Shown: one piece after another, positions 18,801 to 26,999 of the stretch
Numbering within the stretch: the first letter of the stretch is position 1
Layout of the letters: each line of letters opens with the position of its first letter
Assembly: GCA_964106915.2 (NCBI GenBank)
Contig: OZ066921.1
Direction: 5' to 3' (one strand)
Source of the DNA: Podarcis gaigeae
Lineage: Eukaryota
Length of the DNA stretch: 64,000 bases
The notes under the pieces: generated by a model
What the model was told of the DNA's origin: nothing
Databases searched by the model: none
Seen by the model: only the letters and a program-made list of their open reading frames with translations
Position numbers and translations under genes: made by a program

Positions 18801-21800
18801 ATGCCCTAGAAATCTACGGAGACTAAGAATTGTGCTCTTTCTGGGAAAGAACCATAGGTGGTCAGAGAAGACTTGGTTTGCAACCTTCAAGACTGAAGGC
18901 AAAGGTCACCTTCAACACAACCTCAAATTTAATCTCTTTCATGTATGCATATCGCCTGTCTTAGCAGAAAGCTCATATTGCATATTTTATTATGTTTTCT
19001 GGTTTCTGTACATTCTGGCCTCCTGACCACAAAAAAATACTTACACATTTGTGTGCAGCTGGAAGTCTGCTGCCTTATATCCCAATGCAAAGTTATTCTG
19101 TGAAAGTTTGGACTTGGCTGTGTCGAAAGCCATCTGATACCCAGCAAGCCAACCTTCATAGCCCAGAACAGCCCAGCCATGGATGGTTGGTCCAGCGAGG
19201 TCAATATCAACATTACAACCTAGGTTTAGATACTCCCGTTTATAGGATGTCTTCAACTTTCCACTCTTCTTCCTGGGAAGGTGTAAGAACAGGGAATCAA
19301 GTTTAATCCCACCTATAACCTCTAGTAGGCATTTCTTACAAACCCATACATTTAGCAGAGAACTGGGCATGAATTACCCCTGCGTGCTACCTGATGTTAC
19401 ATAATTGATTCAGTGTCACTGTCAATATTTCAATACATTCATTTAAAGACAGTCTTAAGCAAAAGAATAGGAAAGCACCTCCTATGTGAGCTAGCAGCTC
19501 CAGTACAACAGTCTGCAAGTGGTACCATCACCTATGAGGAAAGCACCCAGCTAAAAGTAGCCCTCTCGAGGGATGAATACTTACCCTGTGTTTGGTACAA
19601 ACATGGTTTCAAGGGTCAGCTTCAGTCCCTCAGCCAGCTGAAGTGAAAAAAGAAAAATATAGTACTCGACTTTAAAAAATAATTACTTAATAAGTGGTAT
19701 TTTCTTCCTACTTTTAAATGCTTCTACTTAGCATTTCTTGTTCTTTGTAAATTATGGTGGTCTGCAGCACAGAAAAATGGGGAAAAAAAGTATGATGGAA
19801 ATCCTAGAGAATCAAAAGTTTTCAAATGTTACAGTCTTTGAAAACCAGGCCATTATACATTACCTCATTATTTAGTGCCACCTGTGATAAAATGGAAGGT
19901 TCCCAAATTACATATAACTGAAAAGATCTCACACTTTTTGCCTCAAATACCTAACTAGCAGCCCAAGTACTTGTTGTTTCTGCATATGTGAATTCATTGA
20001 CATACTAATTATATTTCTTGGATTGAAACTCAAGAACTCACAAAAGCACACCTAGGCATTAATTTTTGATAGATTATAAAGCAGCTTCACCATTTGACGG
20101 TCAAGGTATATTCAGAACACCAATTTTCCCTACCTTCAGAGGTAAGGTGGCTGATAAATGGTGAGAGGACCTTTTCAGCAATGGTGTCTATCTGTAGATA
20201 TAGTCTGTAGATATCTCCAGATATAATCTACATTACATTACTACCAACCACTAACTTCAGAATCCCTCACCCCCACTTAAAAAACTCCCCACAACATAGA
20301 AAAAGCTATTTTACACAACTCATTCTTTCCCCATAAGCCTTTGCTTAATTTCTTCTAGTTTACCTGCTATGCTGAAGTCATGAATCCATTTCCTCTTACC
20401 TTATTCTCCATGGACAGTTCTGTCCCCAAGGTGTTGTCAGTGTTCCATTTCTGAGTGAACGTAAGTCCATAATCCTTGAACTTATATTTGGTCTCTAGGC
20501 TGCCTGAGGCTTTGCCTGTGTCTGTGTTGGAGGAACCAGTGGTGATAAATTCCTGTAAACATACCACATTTGAATTACAATGCAATCATGTTTTAAAATG
20601 AATATGCAATTCCAGCAAATCATGCAAGCTTTAGTTCCGCCTACACAATATGCTTTATAATCACCCTGCAACATTTATTCACATCTGCACTGGATTTCAT
20701 GGTCCTACCACATCTAACTTCTCCTTTCTGATGTCTGGAACCAACAATTATGGTTGGTGGAAACAACAAACGCTTCATAAGGTACAAAAAATTACAATAT
20801 ATTGGGTGCTAGACACAGCCACCAGAATGTTCACTGAAGGGCTTTCTGATAATACAGTTTCAATCTTTCCTGATCAATATCCTGCCCTACTTCCAAATAT
20901 TCTTTTAAGTAATCAGTTTGTGTGCATAAAAGAATTACACATTTGGAATCTTAAAACACAGCAGTTTTTTAATCAAGTGTGCAACACAGAAGTTGTGTTA
21001 CATGAGGCTAATACTTCTTTTCTTCAATAGTGTTGAAAGACTCATACTGCAACTGCTCCATTGACCATCTTAATGGAGCTTGCAGACCACCATTTGAGAA
21101 CCTCTGGTCTAGGTCATTACTCTTTCTTTATTTATTTAAAGCATCTATAAACCACTTATTTTTAAAATGAGCCTTGCATATCAGGCTATATATGTTACTA
21201 TTCAACAAAAAACCCTTCTAGTCAGCTTGCCTACAGTCTGCCTTGGTTGGCTATTTAGAGCCTAAGAGGCACACACAGACACCTGTAAGCTTTTGTGGCC
21301 ACCTAAAGCCTATTTTTATGTGCCACAGAAATCAGGCAAGTAGCTGATAATCAGGGTTATAAATAGCCAACTGCCTAATCTAAAGTTATGAGTCTGTGGG
21401 CACAGCCCATCTTTTTAGGTTATTTTTTGTACAGTGATTAGCTTCTTGGTGCTAGATGCTAATGTTGCCTTAGATACTGTACAATTTTACACACATACAA
21501 GTGCCTGACAACAACTTACAAGCTAATGAGGAAGAGAAGCAATTGGAAAAAAGAAAACAGGAAGGCAATTTTAGTTCAGAAACATGGTTCAGCTTCAACA
21601 CAGATTTTCCCTGGCTTAAGAAGGATATGACATCTTGGGTAACTTTCTGTGTGTGTGTGTGTGTGTGTAGCGGCCAGTTAAAAATAATTCCTAGATCCTC
21701 TTTAAAAAGGTTGAGCTGGCGCCAGTGGAGGAGAAACATTTCATTTAACTTTCTTTGTTTGCTGAGTGGGATGAAAAGAAAGAATCTTGCAGTCATATGA

Positions 21801-22652
21801 TCAGACCAGGATTTTCCTGGCAGCTGCAACAAGATCTGAGTGGGGAAGGCAAGAGTGCACACAACATATGTTACTTTTCATCTTACAACTGTCATATGTG
21901 ATGGTTGCTTAGACCCCCATATGTCTGGAGTGCCAAGCTCCACTTAATCTGAGCCAATCCCCAAATTCTGCTTTTGACGTGACATTTCAGCTCAGCACAT
22001 ACATGTGGAGTTATAGGTCTTCATGATGTCAGACAGATCAAAAAGGAAGGCCACAGCAGCATAGAGGCCTTCTAGCTTTACATGATTTTGTTGAAACACA
22101 TGATGGCCAGGAACGTAACCCCTGCATAAGATGCCAGTTACCTGTACTGTGCAGTTTGCAGAAATAAATTTTCTGAAACAATTGAGCAGAACTAGAATAC
22201 TAATGGTCAAAGGGATGGCGCATGACAACCAACAAACACCTTGGGAAGGAATAGAGCTCCAAGGAGGGCAATGAAGTGCCACACACCACACTAAAAAGTC
22301 TTTCCAAGATCCCTGCACTTAAGAGCCTTCAGAAGATGCTGCTCACATATCTTCAGAAATATGGATATGCATAAGAAGTCCTGTCATTATAAATATACAA
22401 ACTGCTGCAACTTCCAGGACCACCCTCTTTTCATATACAGTGGTACCTCTAGATACGAACGGAATCCGTTCCGGAGCCCCAATCGCATCTAGAAGCAAAC
22501 GTAACTAGCGATGGCACGACTGCGCACACCGCTTTTTGTCGCTTCTGCGCATGATGTCATTTTGAGCGTCTGCGCATGCGCAAGTGGCGAAACCCAGAAG
22601 TAACACACTCCGTTACTTCCGGGTTGCCGCGGAGTGCAACTCGAACGCAACC

Positions 22653-22700
<48 letters not shown>

Positions 22701-24874
22701 CGTTTAGGATTCCAAGAGGAGGTTTTTTAAAAAAGCTTAAGTCCTGCTGCAAGGTGAGCAGGGATGCTACTGGCTGGATGGGGAGCTCTCCATGAGCCAC
22801 CAGTTCCTCACCAACTACTTCAGAGATTTAGTCACCAAGTGATACTACTCAGAAATACTAACTTCTAAATTTGAGGCTATCAAAAATAGCATGCCTGTGA
22901 TCACACTGCTGTCTCCAATTCTTTTGACAGTTCAAGTGCAAATGCTACTGATGTATGGAGCTTTACACAATGCAACATTCAGTGTCTGGTTAACCACATT
23001 TACGGGACGCGTAACCCTTTACCTTTAACCACATTTACTTAGCCATTAGAATGGATTAGGAATGGCAGTGGGTCATGGTCCAAGTACACAAACCTGAAGG
23101 AGAGATATATAACAAGAAAGCAAATACGTGGTTCTCTTACCAGCTGAATAAACATCCAAAAATCAGTGTTGCATGTAAAAGGGAGAAGTCACGTTAGAAG
23201 TTAGCATCTTTAATAAGTCAGTAAAGGTGAACCAATCCAAGTATCCATACTGCCACTTCCACTTGCAGAGTCAGATTGTTTAAGCCATAGTTCTAGCTCT
23301 AAACTCCTTCAAATGATTACCTCTCCCACTACAGCTATTCTGAACATGGCAGACAAGTGGACAGGTCATTTGTCACCAGTCCAAATCCTTTCTTCACAGT
23401 TTACTAACAGCTGCTCTATGAGATGTCAAGCACTCAGGAGTCAAGCCTCAAAACACTAAAGCTAATACTGCATGGAGGGGTCCTAAGTATAACCTTCAGG
23501 ACACCCCAAACATACAGGAGAAGCAGAATGTTAGGTGTGTACATTGACTCTGCCAATGCTGTAAAGGTAATATTAGTGCTCCACAAACTCTCCTGTTGCA
23601 ACAATAATTCAAAGTACTCATTACTTACCACTCCGCTGGAAGACTTGGTCTTCAACTCTAGCTTGACCATTCCAAACCCTGAAATTGCCAAAACATTAGT
23701 TTCTTATTTATACCACAATAAATGAATGAGAAACAAAGCCCAAGAAGTAACAAGTTGGGTGCATCTGCCTTTAAAAGGTGCTTGTGATGAGCACCAATAA
23801 AAAGAAAGGCCAGCTTAGCTCTAATGGAAATTCTAGGAGTCACTTGACAGAGACCCACAGATTTTGGCAGGCAATGGCAACATCTGGTTGACTGAACAAC
23901 TCTGATTCAGAGAACTAATGGTGTCCCATCTCATTACAAGGGTCCTGTTGGATCAGATCTAGCATTCAACTACCACAGCAGCCAAACAGATGCCTATGGA
24001 AAGGCCATAAACAGGAAGTGAGTACATGTTCACTTTTTGGAATCGTGCTAAGATTTGGACATTTTGGGTGCATTTTAAGTACAGTACCTCCAAAGAACAG
24101 CTCAAAGACAATCAACAAACCCCTTTAAACTCAGGGAAACTGATATGGGGCTCACCTATGTTATGCCATACTTCATATTCTCAAAATTCCACTAAAGTTG
24201 CAGCGTTGCTGCAGAGACAATCCCAGAGCTGAATATGCAAGCCAATATGTGGCGCAGAGCCCGCTTTAATAAGCCTAAAGTGAGCCAATAGGACGTTCCA
24301 TGCCAGTTTGTGAAATCTGCAATCACCATAGAATGGAGGCCCTCATCCATCTTGAGAGATTATGGACAAAGTCAGATGAGAAGAGTCAGAAAGCAGAAGA
24401 CTGAAATGCAAGTGTTGCCGGCACCAGCTCAAAACCAATTGATTCATCTGAGAATTTAAGAGATGGGCTTTCCTTCCTGCTAGTGCTAGTTTTTAGCTCG
24501 TGTTACATTTTTGGAGAAAATGAATATACACTTTAAATAAAATATAGCATTTAAATAAAACAAGCATTAACTAAAACAGCAAGGGATGAAAGCAAGGCCA
24601 TCAATCCAATAAAAACTCTTAAGGATGGATGACAGATTGATAGAGTGAAGAAGGATAGAGAAACTAGGCGAAGGAGCAAGAACACTTCAAAGATGTGAAC
24701 AAAAATATGCCAATCTTAACACATCTGAAGACCTTTAGCAACAGATTTCCAAAATATTTAGAGAATATATGCATAATGCTAGCATTTGTGGCCATTGTCC
24801 TGCTTACCATATCCTTTGTTGAATACATCCCTGGCAGATTTCCCCAGGTCACAATAGGATGGTGGGATAGCCAT
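15721..24874 (-). CDS. VDAC3: VDAC3, complete: complement(join(15721..15812,16211..16268,18004..18154,19045..19272,19585..19637,20400..20552,23629..23678,24808..24874)), 852 nt, 283 aa
   Basis: 8 GT-AG exons in frame; porin sequence with VDAC3-type Q73 (FTQKWNT), GWAVL, C-terminal FELEA; adjacent to IKBKB as in human 8p11. Confidence 0.96.
16211..16268 (-). CDS. VDAC3: VDAC3 exon ([19 protein letters not shown])
   Basis: ttctag| ... |gtatgt, 58 nt. Confidence 0.95.
16615..16965 (-). mobile_element. Sauria SINE, full length
   Basis: reverse complement of tRNA-like head GGGAC(A)C..GGCGCTGTGGGTTAAACC through to the ACCTTT-type tail. Confidence 0.9.
17538..17978 (+). mobile_element. CR1 LINE 3' fragment
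   Basis: ORF2 C-terminus ([21 protein letters not shown]...) and ATTCTATG-type tail. Confidence 0.92.
18004..18154 (-). CDS. VDAC3: VDAC3 exon ([14 protein letters not shown]...DDKASVS)
   Basis: aatag| ... |gtaaga, 151 nt. Confidence 0.95.
19045..19272 (-). CDS. VDAC3: VDAC3 exon ([11 protein letters not shown]...DFQLHTNV)
   Basis: cccag| ... |gtaagt, 228 nt. Confidence 0.95.
19585..19637 (-). CDS. VDAC3: VDAC3 exon ([18 protein letters not shown])
   Basis: ttcag| ... |gtaagt, 53 nt. Confidence 0.95.
20400..20552 (-). CDS. VDAC3: VDAC3 exon ([17 protein letters not shown]...SMENK)
   Basis: tacag| ... |gtaaga, 153 nt. Confidence 0.95.
21520..21522 (-). CDS. VDAC3: candidate VDAC3 3-nt microexon B (CTT, Leu)
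   Basis: minus strand ...ttccaattgcttctcttcctcattag|CTT|gtaagt; 68-nt AG-free zone; phase-0 intron homologous to the mammalian ATG-microexon intron. Confidence 0.6.
21648..21668. repeat. (TG)n microsatellite
   Basis: direct reading. Confidence 0.9.
22436..22652. mobile_element. truncated Tc1/mariner-type MITE followed by (CA)n
   Basis: TACAGTGGTACCTC left TIR and CpG-rich body. Confidence 0.65.
22658..22696. repeat. (CA)n microsatellite
   Basis: direct reading. Confidence 0.95.
23004..23024 (+). mobile_element. Sauria SINE remnant (only the 5' and 3' tips) between 14-bp TSDs
   Basis: TTAACCACATTTAC-GGGACGCG-TAA-CCCTTTACCT-TTAACCACATTTAC. Confidence 0.7.
23141..23143 (-). CDS. VDAC3: candidate VDAC3 3-nt microexon A (CTG, Leu)
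   Basis: minus strand tgctaacttctaac...ttctcccttttacatgc...tattcag|CTG|gtaaga; 62-nt AG-free zone, two CTAAC branch-point motifs. Confidence 0.6.
23629..23678 (-). CDS. VDAC3: VDAC3 exon ([17 protein letters not shown])
   Basis: ttcag| ... |gtaagt, 50 nt. Confidence 0.95.
24808..24874 (-). CDS. VDAC3: VDAC3 first coding exon ([22 protein letters not shown])
   Basis: ATG at 24872-24874; acceptor at 24880-24881 after a long T tract; |gtaagc donor. Confidence 0.95.
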
Positions 24875-24926: not shown

Positions 24927-26999
24927 AAAAAAAAACAAACCAGTACATATTTGGAAATAAATGAGCATGTATGAACACCATTCTCAGCAATTTCTTGCCA
25001 CTACCTTACATGTCACATATGATGAAGAACCATGAGTCTATTCATAAATCTTCCTTTCTGACTATCAAGAATTTTTTTGAGGGCAAAGAAATAATCCAAA
25101 ATTTGATAGAAAGATTTAATAGTTTGAGTTCAATAACATATTTATTCCATGGCACAGTCTGCTAAGCCAACAACTTCTTTCTCTTGTGTATGGTTCCAAG
25201 AGCAACAGAATGGCTCCTTTGTATCAACCTTAAAAGCCTTTGATCCAAAATTCATATTGGCTCCCCCCACCCCACTGCCACCCACAGAAAATTGCCAGGC
25301 TTGTGGGAAGTGACAAGTCTTTTTACAGCAAGGCCAAACTTGCTGCTTGATTACTTGGGGAAGTAGTTTCGTTGCATTATTCCCAACTCCATGTACTGGA
25401 AAACCTTGTCTTAAGGAAATAAATTTAGTGGTAAAAACTAAATTGGCTGTTGACTCTACCCTATGAGGTGTTGACCTATTGGGCTGTATAGATAAACTTA
25501 TGCATAGCTATCTTGCTACTCTCAAGCTTCTATTTCCATTTCCCCCCTAAAGCATAGCAGGAGTTCTTCTGAACTTTGCTGAAGAAATCTATTCTTGGCA
25601 CATTCCTCTCCAATGTCACCTTCAGGAAGATAGCAGCGGTCAAAACGCAGAACTGCTTTGCAAGTCTGACATGTGGGATATCAGCAAGCCAGCTTTGTGC
25701 TGCTGGATAACATAACTCTTGCTTTTAAACACATCATCTAGGTATTAAGGTTCCAAAAAAATTTCTTTAATATCTGAACTTCCATATACGTATAGATACC
25801 TGGGGGTCTGGCAGGACCACAGCTGAACATGGTTGCAGACTTCTTATTTCACAATTTAGCTCCTAAATCATTTACTTCTCAACGTGAACCTACAGGACTC
25901 TCCTCTAGCTCTTTGATATACACCTGTCAAATATGGGGGGGAAATGCATGCATCATTAAAGATCAAAGCTATCACTTATAATACCTGCAACCACTACTTT
26001 TATACTCACTGTAACACAATGTTTATACCAAACCTTCAAGGACAGCATGACAGGCAAACTTAAAAAAAATACACATTAATTAATATCACTACTCTACTAG
26101 GTTTAACCCCTGAAGGGAAGGAGCCGCTTCATATAAGTCCAGAGGTGTGAAAAGCATGTATGTGCAATATGTAGGGGATAGGGACAGGGAGATAGTATAT
26201 GTGGGCATGTGCACTGGGAAACTGTTTACTACTGGCTTCTCAAATGTACACATAAGTTATACATAACATTCACATACGACAGGTCTACTTGAAGAGACCC
26301 TTACCTTACTATACATCAGACCAACCTCTCCCTTGGAAAAGGGAATATGACACCTATGATTATCATTATCAAACGCCTGCCAGCTATAGAGGCTCCAAGC
26401 CTCCTGCTTGGGGGGAAAGGGAGTATCTGTATGCAGTCAGCTCATGTAATTACTGGCAGCAGTGCATTCTGAATTCAGCCATTCAAATCCAGCTCTTCAG
26501 TTCATTCAGGTGAGTCAATTCTTTCTATAAAGTAGATACACTAAAAAGCATGGATCCAACCTAAGCCTGACCATTCTAATTCTTTCAATAATAAATCATG
26601 GTTCCAAGCTTTCCTCAAGTCAAATTAACATTGATTCTGGAGGTATTTCAAATCAGCCTCCCCATTTTAGGCAGAATGTGTTAATCTGGACTCTCCGAGT
26701 GGAGATGGCTTTTTATTTTATGTTTGTCTGCTTGCTTCCTATATGCCTCTCAAAGTATTTTTAGCCCCCTTCGATTTCTTCTCCCTTTTCCTTTCACATA
26801 TAATTTGTGCCCTATTCCCACCCCCAAGTACAGGCAATTTCTTCCATCCCTCCTCCCTGCTCCTTGTACATTCACTTCCTCCTATACCAGCTACCCTCTC
26901 TATTCCCAGTTTATCATGACTTTTAGAGCTGCTGCTTGTATCTGTCCCCTGTGAGAGGGGGTGGACTGCAGTGCTAACACTGATCTGGAAGTGGGCTAG

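What the first reader, a model, noticed from the sequence alone, without database searches (positions are those of the whole stretch)
21518..23209. Two separate 3-nt Leu microexons in the VDAC3 intron that holds one ATG microexon in mammals
Known: mammalian VDAC3 has a tissue-regulated 3-nt exon (ATG) inserting Met after V39. Seen: the homologous phase-0 intron here (20553-23628) holds two AG|NNN|GTAAG units on the minus strand, tattcag|CTG|gtaaga (23141-23143) and cattag|CTT|gtaagt (21520-21522). Each has a long AG-free zone (62 and 68 nt), pyrimidine tracts and nearby UGC motifs. Both encode Leu. Inference: a duplicated microexon system giving GV-EF, GV-L-EF by two routes, or GV-LL-EF. Two synonymous exons under different regulators could yield the same protein in different tissues. 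I do not know of a description of this arrangement.
Basis: partly seen in the sequence, partly recalled or inferred. Interest (0 to 1): 0.8.

Follow-up and report, generated by a model that had tools for sequence, protein, structure and literature searches.

The report
One conserved VDAC3 microexon, one look-alike
The first unit (CTG) is the lizard copy of a 3-base exon that vertebrate VDAC3 genes have kept since before sharks and bony fishes split, coding Leu instead of Met in reptiles and birds; the second (CTT) is a splice-like site found only in this species, with no sign of use.

Summary
Both AG|NNN|GTAAG units lie at the stated coordinates, in the phase-0 VDAC3 intron (20553-23628, minus strand). 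RNA joints confirm the intron borders. The units are rare: 2 found against 0.25 expected. They are the only two sites of that quality in the window, on either strand.

- **Unit A (CTG, 23143-23141)** is the ortholog of the known vertebrate VDAC3 3-nt microexon. The same unit, with a conserved upstream block of about 75 nt, sits in this intron in five other squamates and two birds (CTG, or TTG in blue tit). Paddlefish has it as ATG. Public gene models of four squamates, many birds and platypus already carry GV-L-EF. Fishes, frog and therian mammals carry GV-M-EF.
- **Unit B (CTT, 21522-21520)** is not a duplicate of A. Its position aligns in four other squamates, and none of them has the acceptor AG.

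No listed protein has GV-LL-EF. Four RNA runs of unknown tissue show only the direct exon 2 to exon 3 joint. That fits a neural-specific exon but proves nothing for or against A or B here. Verdict: one known conserved microexon plus one probably unused, lineage-specific site.

The parts
23629..23678 (-). VDAC3 coding exon 2 (50 nt, ends ...GGAGTG, codon boundary)
   Evidence: Joints 23677/8->24807/8 and 20551/2->23628/9 in four RNA runs. Translation is [16 protein letters not shown].
23141..23143 (-). Microexon A, CTG (Leu): ortholog of the vertebrate VDAC3 3-nt microexon
   Evidence: Sequence. The same unit is in Sceloporus L001:3707, Pogona L005:4259, Varanus L006:3047, Crotalus L007:9030, Sphaerodactylus L008:2974 and Cygnus L002:3435 (all CTG), Cyanistes L003:4696 (TTG) and Polyodon L004:2270 (ATG). 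Alignments A1 and A3.
23144..23218 (-). Conserved upstream intronic block of A: CTAAC branch-point-like motif (23197-23193), UGC (23173-23171), UUUGGAUG, acceptor cag
   Evidence: 83% identical to Sceloporus and 61-64% to birds over 75 nt, against 28-32% to birds further upstream. Invariant columns in A3. AG-free zone of 62 nt.
23135..23140 (-). Donor of A, gtaaga
   Evidence: The nine bases NNNGTAAGA are 100% identical in Sceloporus and Cygnus. GTAAG is invariant in all seven species of A3.
21520..21522 (-). Candidate B, CTT between tag and gtaagt: lineage-specific splice-like site, no evidence of use
   Evidence: Sequence. Aligned positions read TCG (Sceloporus), TTG (Pogona), TAA (Varanus) and TGG (Sphaerodactylus) where the window has TAG; a GT donor is present in only two of the four. 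The upstream 40 nt are 40-48% identical. No joint in RNA.
20400..20552 (-). VDAC3 coding exon 3 (153 nt, starts GAATTT)
   Evidence: Joints in four RNA runs. Translation is [14 protein letters not shown]....

Best explanation
The window carries lizard VDAC3 on the minus strand. Unit A (CTG, 23143-23141) is this species' copy of the ancient vertebrate VDAC3 3-nt microexon. When spliced in, it adds one residue between Gly-Val and Glu-Phe near the start of the beta-barrel. The residue is Leu in squamates, birds and platypus, and Met in sharks, ray-finned fishes, lungfish, frogs and therian mammals. By analogy with zebrafish, inclusion is expected mainly in neurons and partly in heart, driven by Srrm3/4. 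Those factors would act through the conserved UGC-containing block between a distant branch point and the acceptor. This regulation is inferred, not shown here. Unit B (CTT, 21522-21520) most likely arose by chance. An old T-rich stretch followed by GTAAG gained a TAG acceptor in this lineage. It is most likely not used, or used only at noise level.
For: Orthology of A is shown. The unit and about 75 nt upstream align across five squamates, two birds and paddlefish, with invariant CTAA, TTTGGA, CAG and GTAAG columns. This block is the best-conserved part of the intron: 77.6% identity to Sceloporus over 156 nt against about 61% elsewhere, and it is the only part that aligns to birds. One-residue insertions at this junction are annotated as Leu in Sceloporus X1/X3, Varanus X1/X3, Pogona X1 (old), Sphaerodactylus X1, duck, swan, pelican, tit, pigeon, dipper and platypus. 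They are annotated as Met in elephant shark, white shark, Polypterus, paddlefish, teleosts, lungfish, frog and lemur. CTG versus TTG in blue tit keeps Leu. Zebrafish vdac3 has a 3-nt microexon, DreEX0084235. Its PSI is 91-97 in neurons and brain, 26 in heart and about 0 in kidney, skin, testis and gut. It drops by 41 points in the Srrm3/4 knockout, and it is listed as the ortholog of HsaEX0070291 (PMC12626424, supplementary files). Against B: the acceptor is absent in four aligned squamates, the upstream flank is at neutral identity, there is no similarity to A, every other intron has exactly one AG|NNN|GTRAG unit, and no LL isoform was found.
Against: No read or contig in four RNA runs from four studies contains either microexon. 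In X23, 57 reads cross the direct joint and none has letters between. Use of A in this species is therefore inferred from orthology, and the tissues of those runs are unknown. B is not a common accident: A and B are the only two sites of that quality in 128 kb of window strands. B also has a better pyrimidine tract than A and a UGC at -19, so neuronal use cannot be excluded. No close relative of the window species could be fetched, so conservation of B within the family is untested.
Confidence: 0.8

Rival explanations
1. One reading: both A and B are functional 3-nt Leu microexons. They would give GV-L-EF by two routes, or GV-LL-EF, possibly under different regulators.
For: B has a strong pyrimidine tract (89%), a 68-nt AG-free zone, a GTAAGT donor and a UGC at -19. 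Sites of this quality occur nowhere else in the window. Two AGNNNGTAAG units in the intron have P about 0.03 by chance.
Against: The acceptor AG is missing at the aligned site in all four squamates compared, and the donor GT in two of them. The flank is at neutral identity. B is not a duplicate of A. No LL isoform was found in any species. No joint to B appears in four RNA runs. The thresholds were chosen after seeing B.
Confidence: 0.1
2. Neither unit is spliced in this species. A is an inherited sequence whose inclusion has been lost or is negligible here.
For: Four RNA runs show only the direct joint, with no inserted letters.
Against: A's acceptor, donor, UGC and branch-point-like motif are all intact and nearly identical to those of species with annotated Leu isoforms. 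In zebrafish the exon is at about 0 PSI outside brain and heart, so skipping in unselected tissues is expected.
Confidence: 0.06
3. B is not an exon but acts as a decoy or intermediate splice site. For example, it could be a stepwise-splicing landing site that influences removal of the 3-kb intron or inclusion of A.
For: Juxtaposed strong acceptor and donor signals resemble recursive-splicing-type sites. The 90 nt downstream of B are somewhat better conserved among squamates (62-74%) than the upstream flank.
Against: The intron is short, and recursive sites are typical of very long introns (general knowledge). The AG is not conserved. No reads end or join at B.
Confidence: 0.03

Closest known systems
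Mammalian VDAC3 3-base ATG exon (Sampson et al. 1998, J Biol Chem 273:30482; summarised in PMC8374620)
   Same: Same gene, same phase-0 intron, same junction (after Gly-Val, before Glu-Phe), same 3-nt length. Lemur VDAC3 isoform X2 reads SGVMEF.
   Different: The codon is CTG (Leu) here, not ATG (Met). The review's idea that the ATG serves as an alternative start cannot be the shared function, since sauropsids and platypus lack ATG. Direct alignment to a mammalian intron was not done: no non-primate therian locus was fetched.
Zebrafish vdac3 neuronal microexon DreEX0084235 / human HsaEX0070291 (VastDB; PMC12626424)
   Same: A 3-nt exon in the homologous intron. The paddlefish ATG unit, from a fellow ray-finned fish, aligns with window unit A, sharing TTTGGA...CAG|NTG|GTAAG and an upstream UGC.
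   Different: Neural specificity and Srrm3/4 dependence are measured in zebrafish only and are inferred for the lizard. The zebrafish locus itself was not fetched.
Annotated GV-L-EF isoforms of sauropsid VDAC3 (e.g. Sceloporus undulatus X1 XP_042329133.1, Varanus komodoensis X1, Sphaerodactylus townsendi X1, Cygnus olor X1)
   Same: The same CTG unit with near-identical flanks lies in their introns. The proteins carry the single Leu.
   Different: None of them has a second unit like B. Whether the window species itself has an annotated Leu isoform could not be seen with these tools.

Membership tests
Vertebrate VDAC3 3-nt microexon (unit A) | Lies in the phase-0 intron between the ...SGV exon and the EF... 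exon of VDAC3 | tested here: met
   Intron 20553-23628 is fixed by RNA joints.
Vertebrate VDAC3 3-nt microexon (unit A) | Exactly 3 nt between a usable acceptor AG and a donor GT | tested here: met
   cag|CTG|gtaaga. Donor score is 5.2, within the range of the gene's real donors (5.1-6.6). AG-free zone is 62 nt.
Vertebrate VDAC3 3-nt microexon (unit A) | Flanking intron sequence orthologous to that of species where the insertion is annotated | tested here: met
   Alignments A1 and A3. 83-85% identity upstream to Sceloporus and 61-69% to birds. It is the only intron block that aligns to birds.
Vertebrate VDAC3 3-nt microexon (unit A) | Included in mature mRNA of this species | tested here: inconclusive
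   0 of 57 junction reads in X23 and no contig in X5, X1 or X9 carry it. The tissues are unknown, and PSI is about 0 outside brain and heart in zebrafish.
Vertebrate VDAC3 3-nt microexon (unit A) | Neural enrichment and Srrm3/4 (eMIC) dependence | not testable with these tools
   Only the cis feature could be checked: a UGC at -30 is conserved in all sauropsids compared, and a UGC is present in paddlefish.
Vertebrate VDAC3 3-nt microexon (unit B as a second member) | Splice dinucleotides conserved in related species | tested here: not met
   Where the window has TAG, the others read TCG, TTG, TAA and TGG. GT is kept only in Sceloporus and Pogona.
Vertebrate VDAC3 3-nt microexon (unit B as a second member) | Derived from A by duplication | tested here: not met
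   The local alignment score of the +/-100 nt flanks is 10, against a shuffle mean of 12.1.
Vertebrate VDAC3 3-nt microexon (unit B as a second member) | Included in mRNA (CTT or CTGCTT between exons 2 and 3), or an LL isoform in any species | tested here: inconclusive
   No joint and no inserted letters in four runs. No LL among about 390 proteins. Neural tissue was not tested.

The most novel reading that the evidence does not exclude
B is a newborn, lineage-specific second microexon. A single change created a TAG acceptor in front of an ancestral T-rich tract and GTAAG, only 1.6 kb downstream of the ancient microexon A, with a UGC at -19. Neurons of this lizard could therefore include it, giving GV-L-EF by a second route or GV-LL-EF. 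That would be a rare snapshot of how a 3-nt exon is born.
Probability: 0.1. Interest if true: 0.7.

Novelty: already known. Interest (0 to 1): 0.25.

Why it matters
The real feature, A, is a known and deeply conserved microexon, so finding it in one more lizard is routine annotation.

Two points carry modest value. First, the inserted residue is Leu (CTG or TTG) in squamates, birds and platypus, and Met (ATG) elsewhere. The conserved role must therefore be a one-residue hydrophobic insertion near the first beta-strands of VDAC3. It cannot be the alternative start codon that the mammalian literature sometimes proposes. I found no paper stating this, but my search was narrow. Second, B shows how close neutral intron sequence can come to a microexon. 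It is a cheap, well-defined test case for whether signal strength alone is enough for a 3-nt exon to be recognised.

Tried and rejected
- **Duplication of A into B:** rejected. The flanks are unrelated.
- **The weak ag|ATG|gtcaat at 21068-21066 as the true ortholog of the mammalian ATG exon:** rejected. Its donor score is -1.7, its AG-free zone is 8 nt, and A carries the conserved flanks.
- **RNA test:** only one read-laying run was allowed. The four runs chosen (one of raw reads, three of contigs) turned out uninformative about neural inclusion. B's position had no intronic coverage, so within-species variation at the TAG could not be read.
- **Frog, white shark, platypus and Heteronotia isoform X2 loci:** not available, because the files were too large or the isoform was not on record.
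- **Closer relative of the window species:** the three squamate protein clusters held none that I could recognise. B's age within the family is therefore unknown.
- **Spliced VDAC3 model:** Exon 5 alone went, by reference, into the representative search, and later searches used database proteins. The joined-model search is left out.
- **Human-related limits:** no contig taken for human was fetched. Primate hits appeared only as rows in protein lists.

Full report
**Observation.** On the minus strand the window encodes VDAC3. One search shows exon 2 ending ...GGAGTG at 23629, followed by gtaagt. Exon 3 starts GAATTT at 20552, after tttacag. Four RNA runs from four studies all join 23629 directly to 20552. 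They also confirm the neighbouring exons at 24879-24808, 19637-19585 and 19272-19044. Exon 2 ends on a codon boundary, so the intron is phase 0.

They are tattcag|CTG|gtaaga (CTG at 23143-23141) and cattag|CTT|gtaagt (CTT at 21522-21520). The AG-free zones are 62 and 68 nt. Pyrimidine content of the last 18 nt is 67% for A and 89% for B. UGC lies at about -30 for A and -19 for B.

**More than chance?** AGNNNGTAAG occurs twice in this 3076-nt intron against 0.25 expected, with P(>=2) = 0.028. Both strands of the window hold 427 AG-NNN-GT sites. Only these two combine a fair donor, a pyrimidine tract and a long AG-free zone. Those thresholds were chosen after the fact.

**What A is.** I searched exon 5 alone, by reference, against the representative library. 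I then used database proteins as queries and listed cluster members. Many public VDAC3 models carry one extra residue exactly between GV and EF.
- **Met:** elephant shark, white shark, Polypterus, paddlefish, many teleosts, lungfish, frog and lemur.
- **Leu:** Sceloporus undulatus X1/X3, Varanus komodoensis X1/X3, Pogona vitticeps X1 (older release), Sphaerodactylus townsendi X1, duck, swan, pelican, blue tit, pigeon, dipper and platypus X3.

I fetched the genomic loci and scanned the homologous intron in each. Each intron holds exactly one AG|NNN|GTRAG unit.
- CTG in Sceloporus, Pogona, Varanus, Crotalus, Sphaerodactylus and swan.
- TTG in blue tit.
- ATG in paddlefish.

These units align with window unit A together with about 75 nt upstream (alignments A1 and A3). 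Invariant or near-invariant elements are:
- a CTAAC-type branch-point motif about 50 nt upstream;
- CCAUGCAAC, which contains the UGC;
- UUUGGAUG;
- the CAG acceptor and the GTAAG donor.

The upstream 75 nt are 83% identical to Sceloporus and 61-64% to birds. The rest of the intron is about 61% identical to Sceloporus and does not align to birds at all. A is therefore the ortholog of the vertebrate VDAC3 microexon.

In zebrafish this is the 3-nt exon DreEX0084235. Its PSI is 91-97 in neurons and brain, 26 in heart and about 0 in kidney, skin, gut and testis. It falls by 41 points without Srrm3/4. VastDB lists it as the ortholog of human HsaEX0070291 (PMC12626424, supplementary files). The mammalian ATG exon goes back to Sampson et al. 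1998, as summarised in PMC8374620.

**What B is.** The B region aligns with the introns of Sceloporus, Pogona, Varanus and Sphaerodactylus. Where the window reads TAG|CTT|GTAAGT, the others read as follows.

| Species | Acceptor position | 3 nt | Donor position |
|---|---|---|---|
| Window | TAG | CTT | GTAAGT |
| Sceloporus | TCG | ATT | GTAAGG |
| Pogona | TTG | ATT | GTATGC |
| Varanus | TAA | ACC | ATAAGC |
| Sphaerodactylus | TGG | ACA | GGAAAC |

None has the acceptor AG, and only two have GT. The 40 nt upstream of B are 40-48% identical, which is neutral or worse, against 85% for A. In Crotalus the region is missing. The flanks of A and B are unrelated, so B is not a copy of A.

B therefore looks like an old T-rich stretch followed by GTAAG that gained a TAG in this lineage.

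**RNA.** In raw-read run X23, 57 reads cross the direct joint. No letters lie between the two sides, and no joint lands at A or B. The dominant contigs of X5, X1 and X9 show the same. The short loose ends at 20553 read straight into exon 2.

This bounds inclusion to under about 5% in that sample. The tissues are unknown, however, and zebrafish shows about 0 PSI outside brain and heart. The result fits a neural exon and does not test B in neurons.

**Mechanism.** Shown: orthology of A, its intact signals, and annotated Leu isoforms in relatives. Inferred: in this lizard A is included mainly in neurons through Srrm3/4 acting on the UGC block, adding Leu after Val of ...SSSGV. Inferred: B is skipped.

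**Comparison and novelty.** A is a known microexon, and the Leu isoform is already in public annotation of other sauropsids. The Met-to-Leu difference between clades is a small point worth noting. It argues against an alternative-start role as the conserved function. The two-exon system is not supported.

**Limits.**
- No confamilial genome was available.
- No neural RNA was tested.
- No mammalian intron was aligned.

Noticed in passing
window 25804-25833 (minus strand), spliced to 24879: An upstream exon carries an in-frame ATG. Eighteen X23 reads run from exon 1 into letters that match 25833-25804 with one mismatch. The reading is MFSCGPARPPDP followed by the usual MAIPPSY... This N-terminally extended VDAC3 resembles the X1 isoforms of other squamates and birds, and recalls the VDAC2 extension.
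   Followed up: partly
protein P0337 (Gracilinanus agilis VDAC1 isoform X2): An opossum VDAC1 model reads ENGLMEFTSSG, with a Met inserted at the homologous junction. The 3-nt ATG microexon may therefore also exist in the paralog VDAC1.
   Followed up: no
proteins P0325 (Macaca mulatta VDAC3, UniRef) and P0202 (Nothobranchius furzeri): These models read GVQEF, with Gln instead of Met at the junction. A tandem CAG acceptor or a different 3-nt unit could explain it.
   Followed up: no
window 21511-21420 (minus strand), just downstream of B: This block is 62-74% identical among four squamates, against 40-53% just upstream. In the window it holds an inverted repeat, TTGTACAGT...ACTGTACAA, that is not kept in Sceloporus. 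Its function is unknown.
   Followed up: partly
window 22430-22710: A SINE-like repeat plus a (GT)n run has very high summed contig depth in RNA runs (up to 557) and some antisense reads in X23. This is most likely copies of the repeat transcribed elsewhere, not this intron.
   Followed up: no
window 19206, 20472, 24854 (VDAC3 exons): All four RNA runs read G where the window has A on the plus strand, in 100% of reads and contigs. Intronic contigs differ from the window by 2-3%. The sequenced animals differ from the assembly individual; this is not RNA editing.
   Followed up: no
L007:8990-9030 (Crotalus horridus): In the rattlesnake the conserved CCAUGCAAC upstream of the microexon reads UGCAUGCAAC, which creates a UGCAUG (RBFOX-type) motif.
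   Followed up: no
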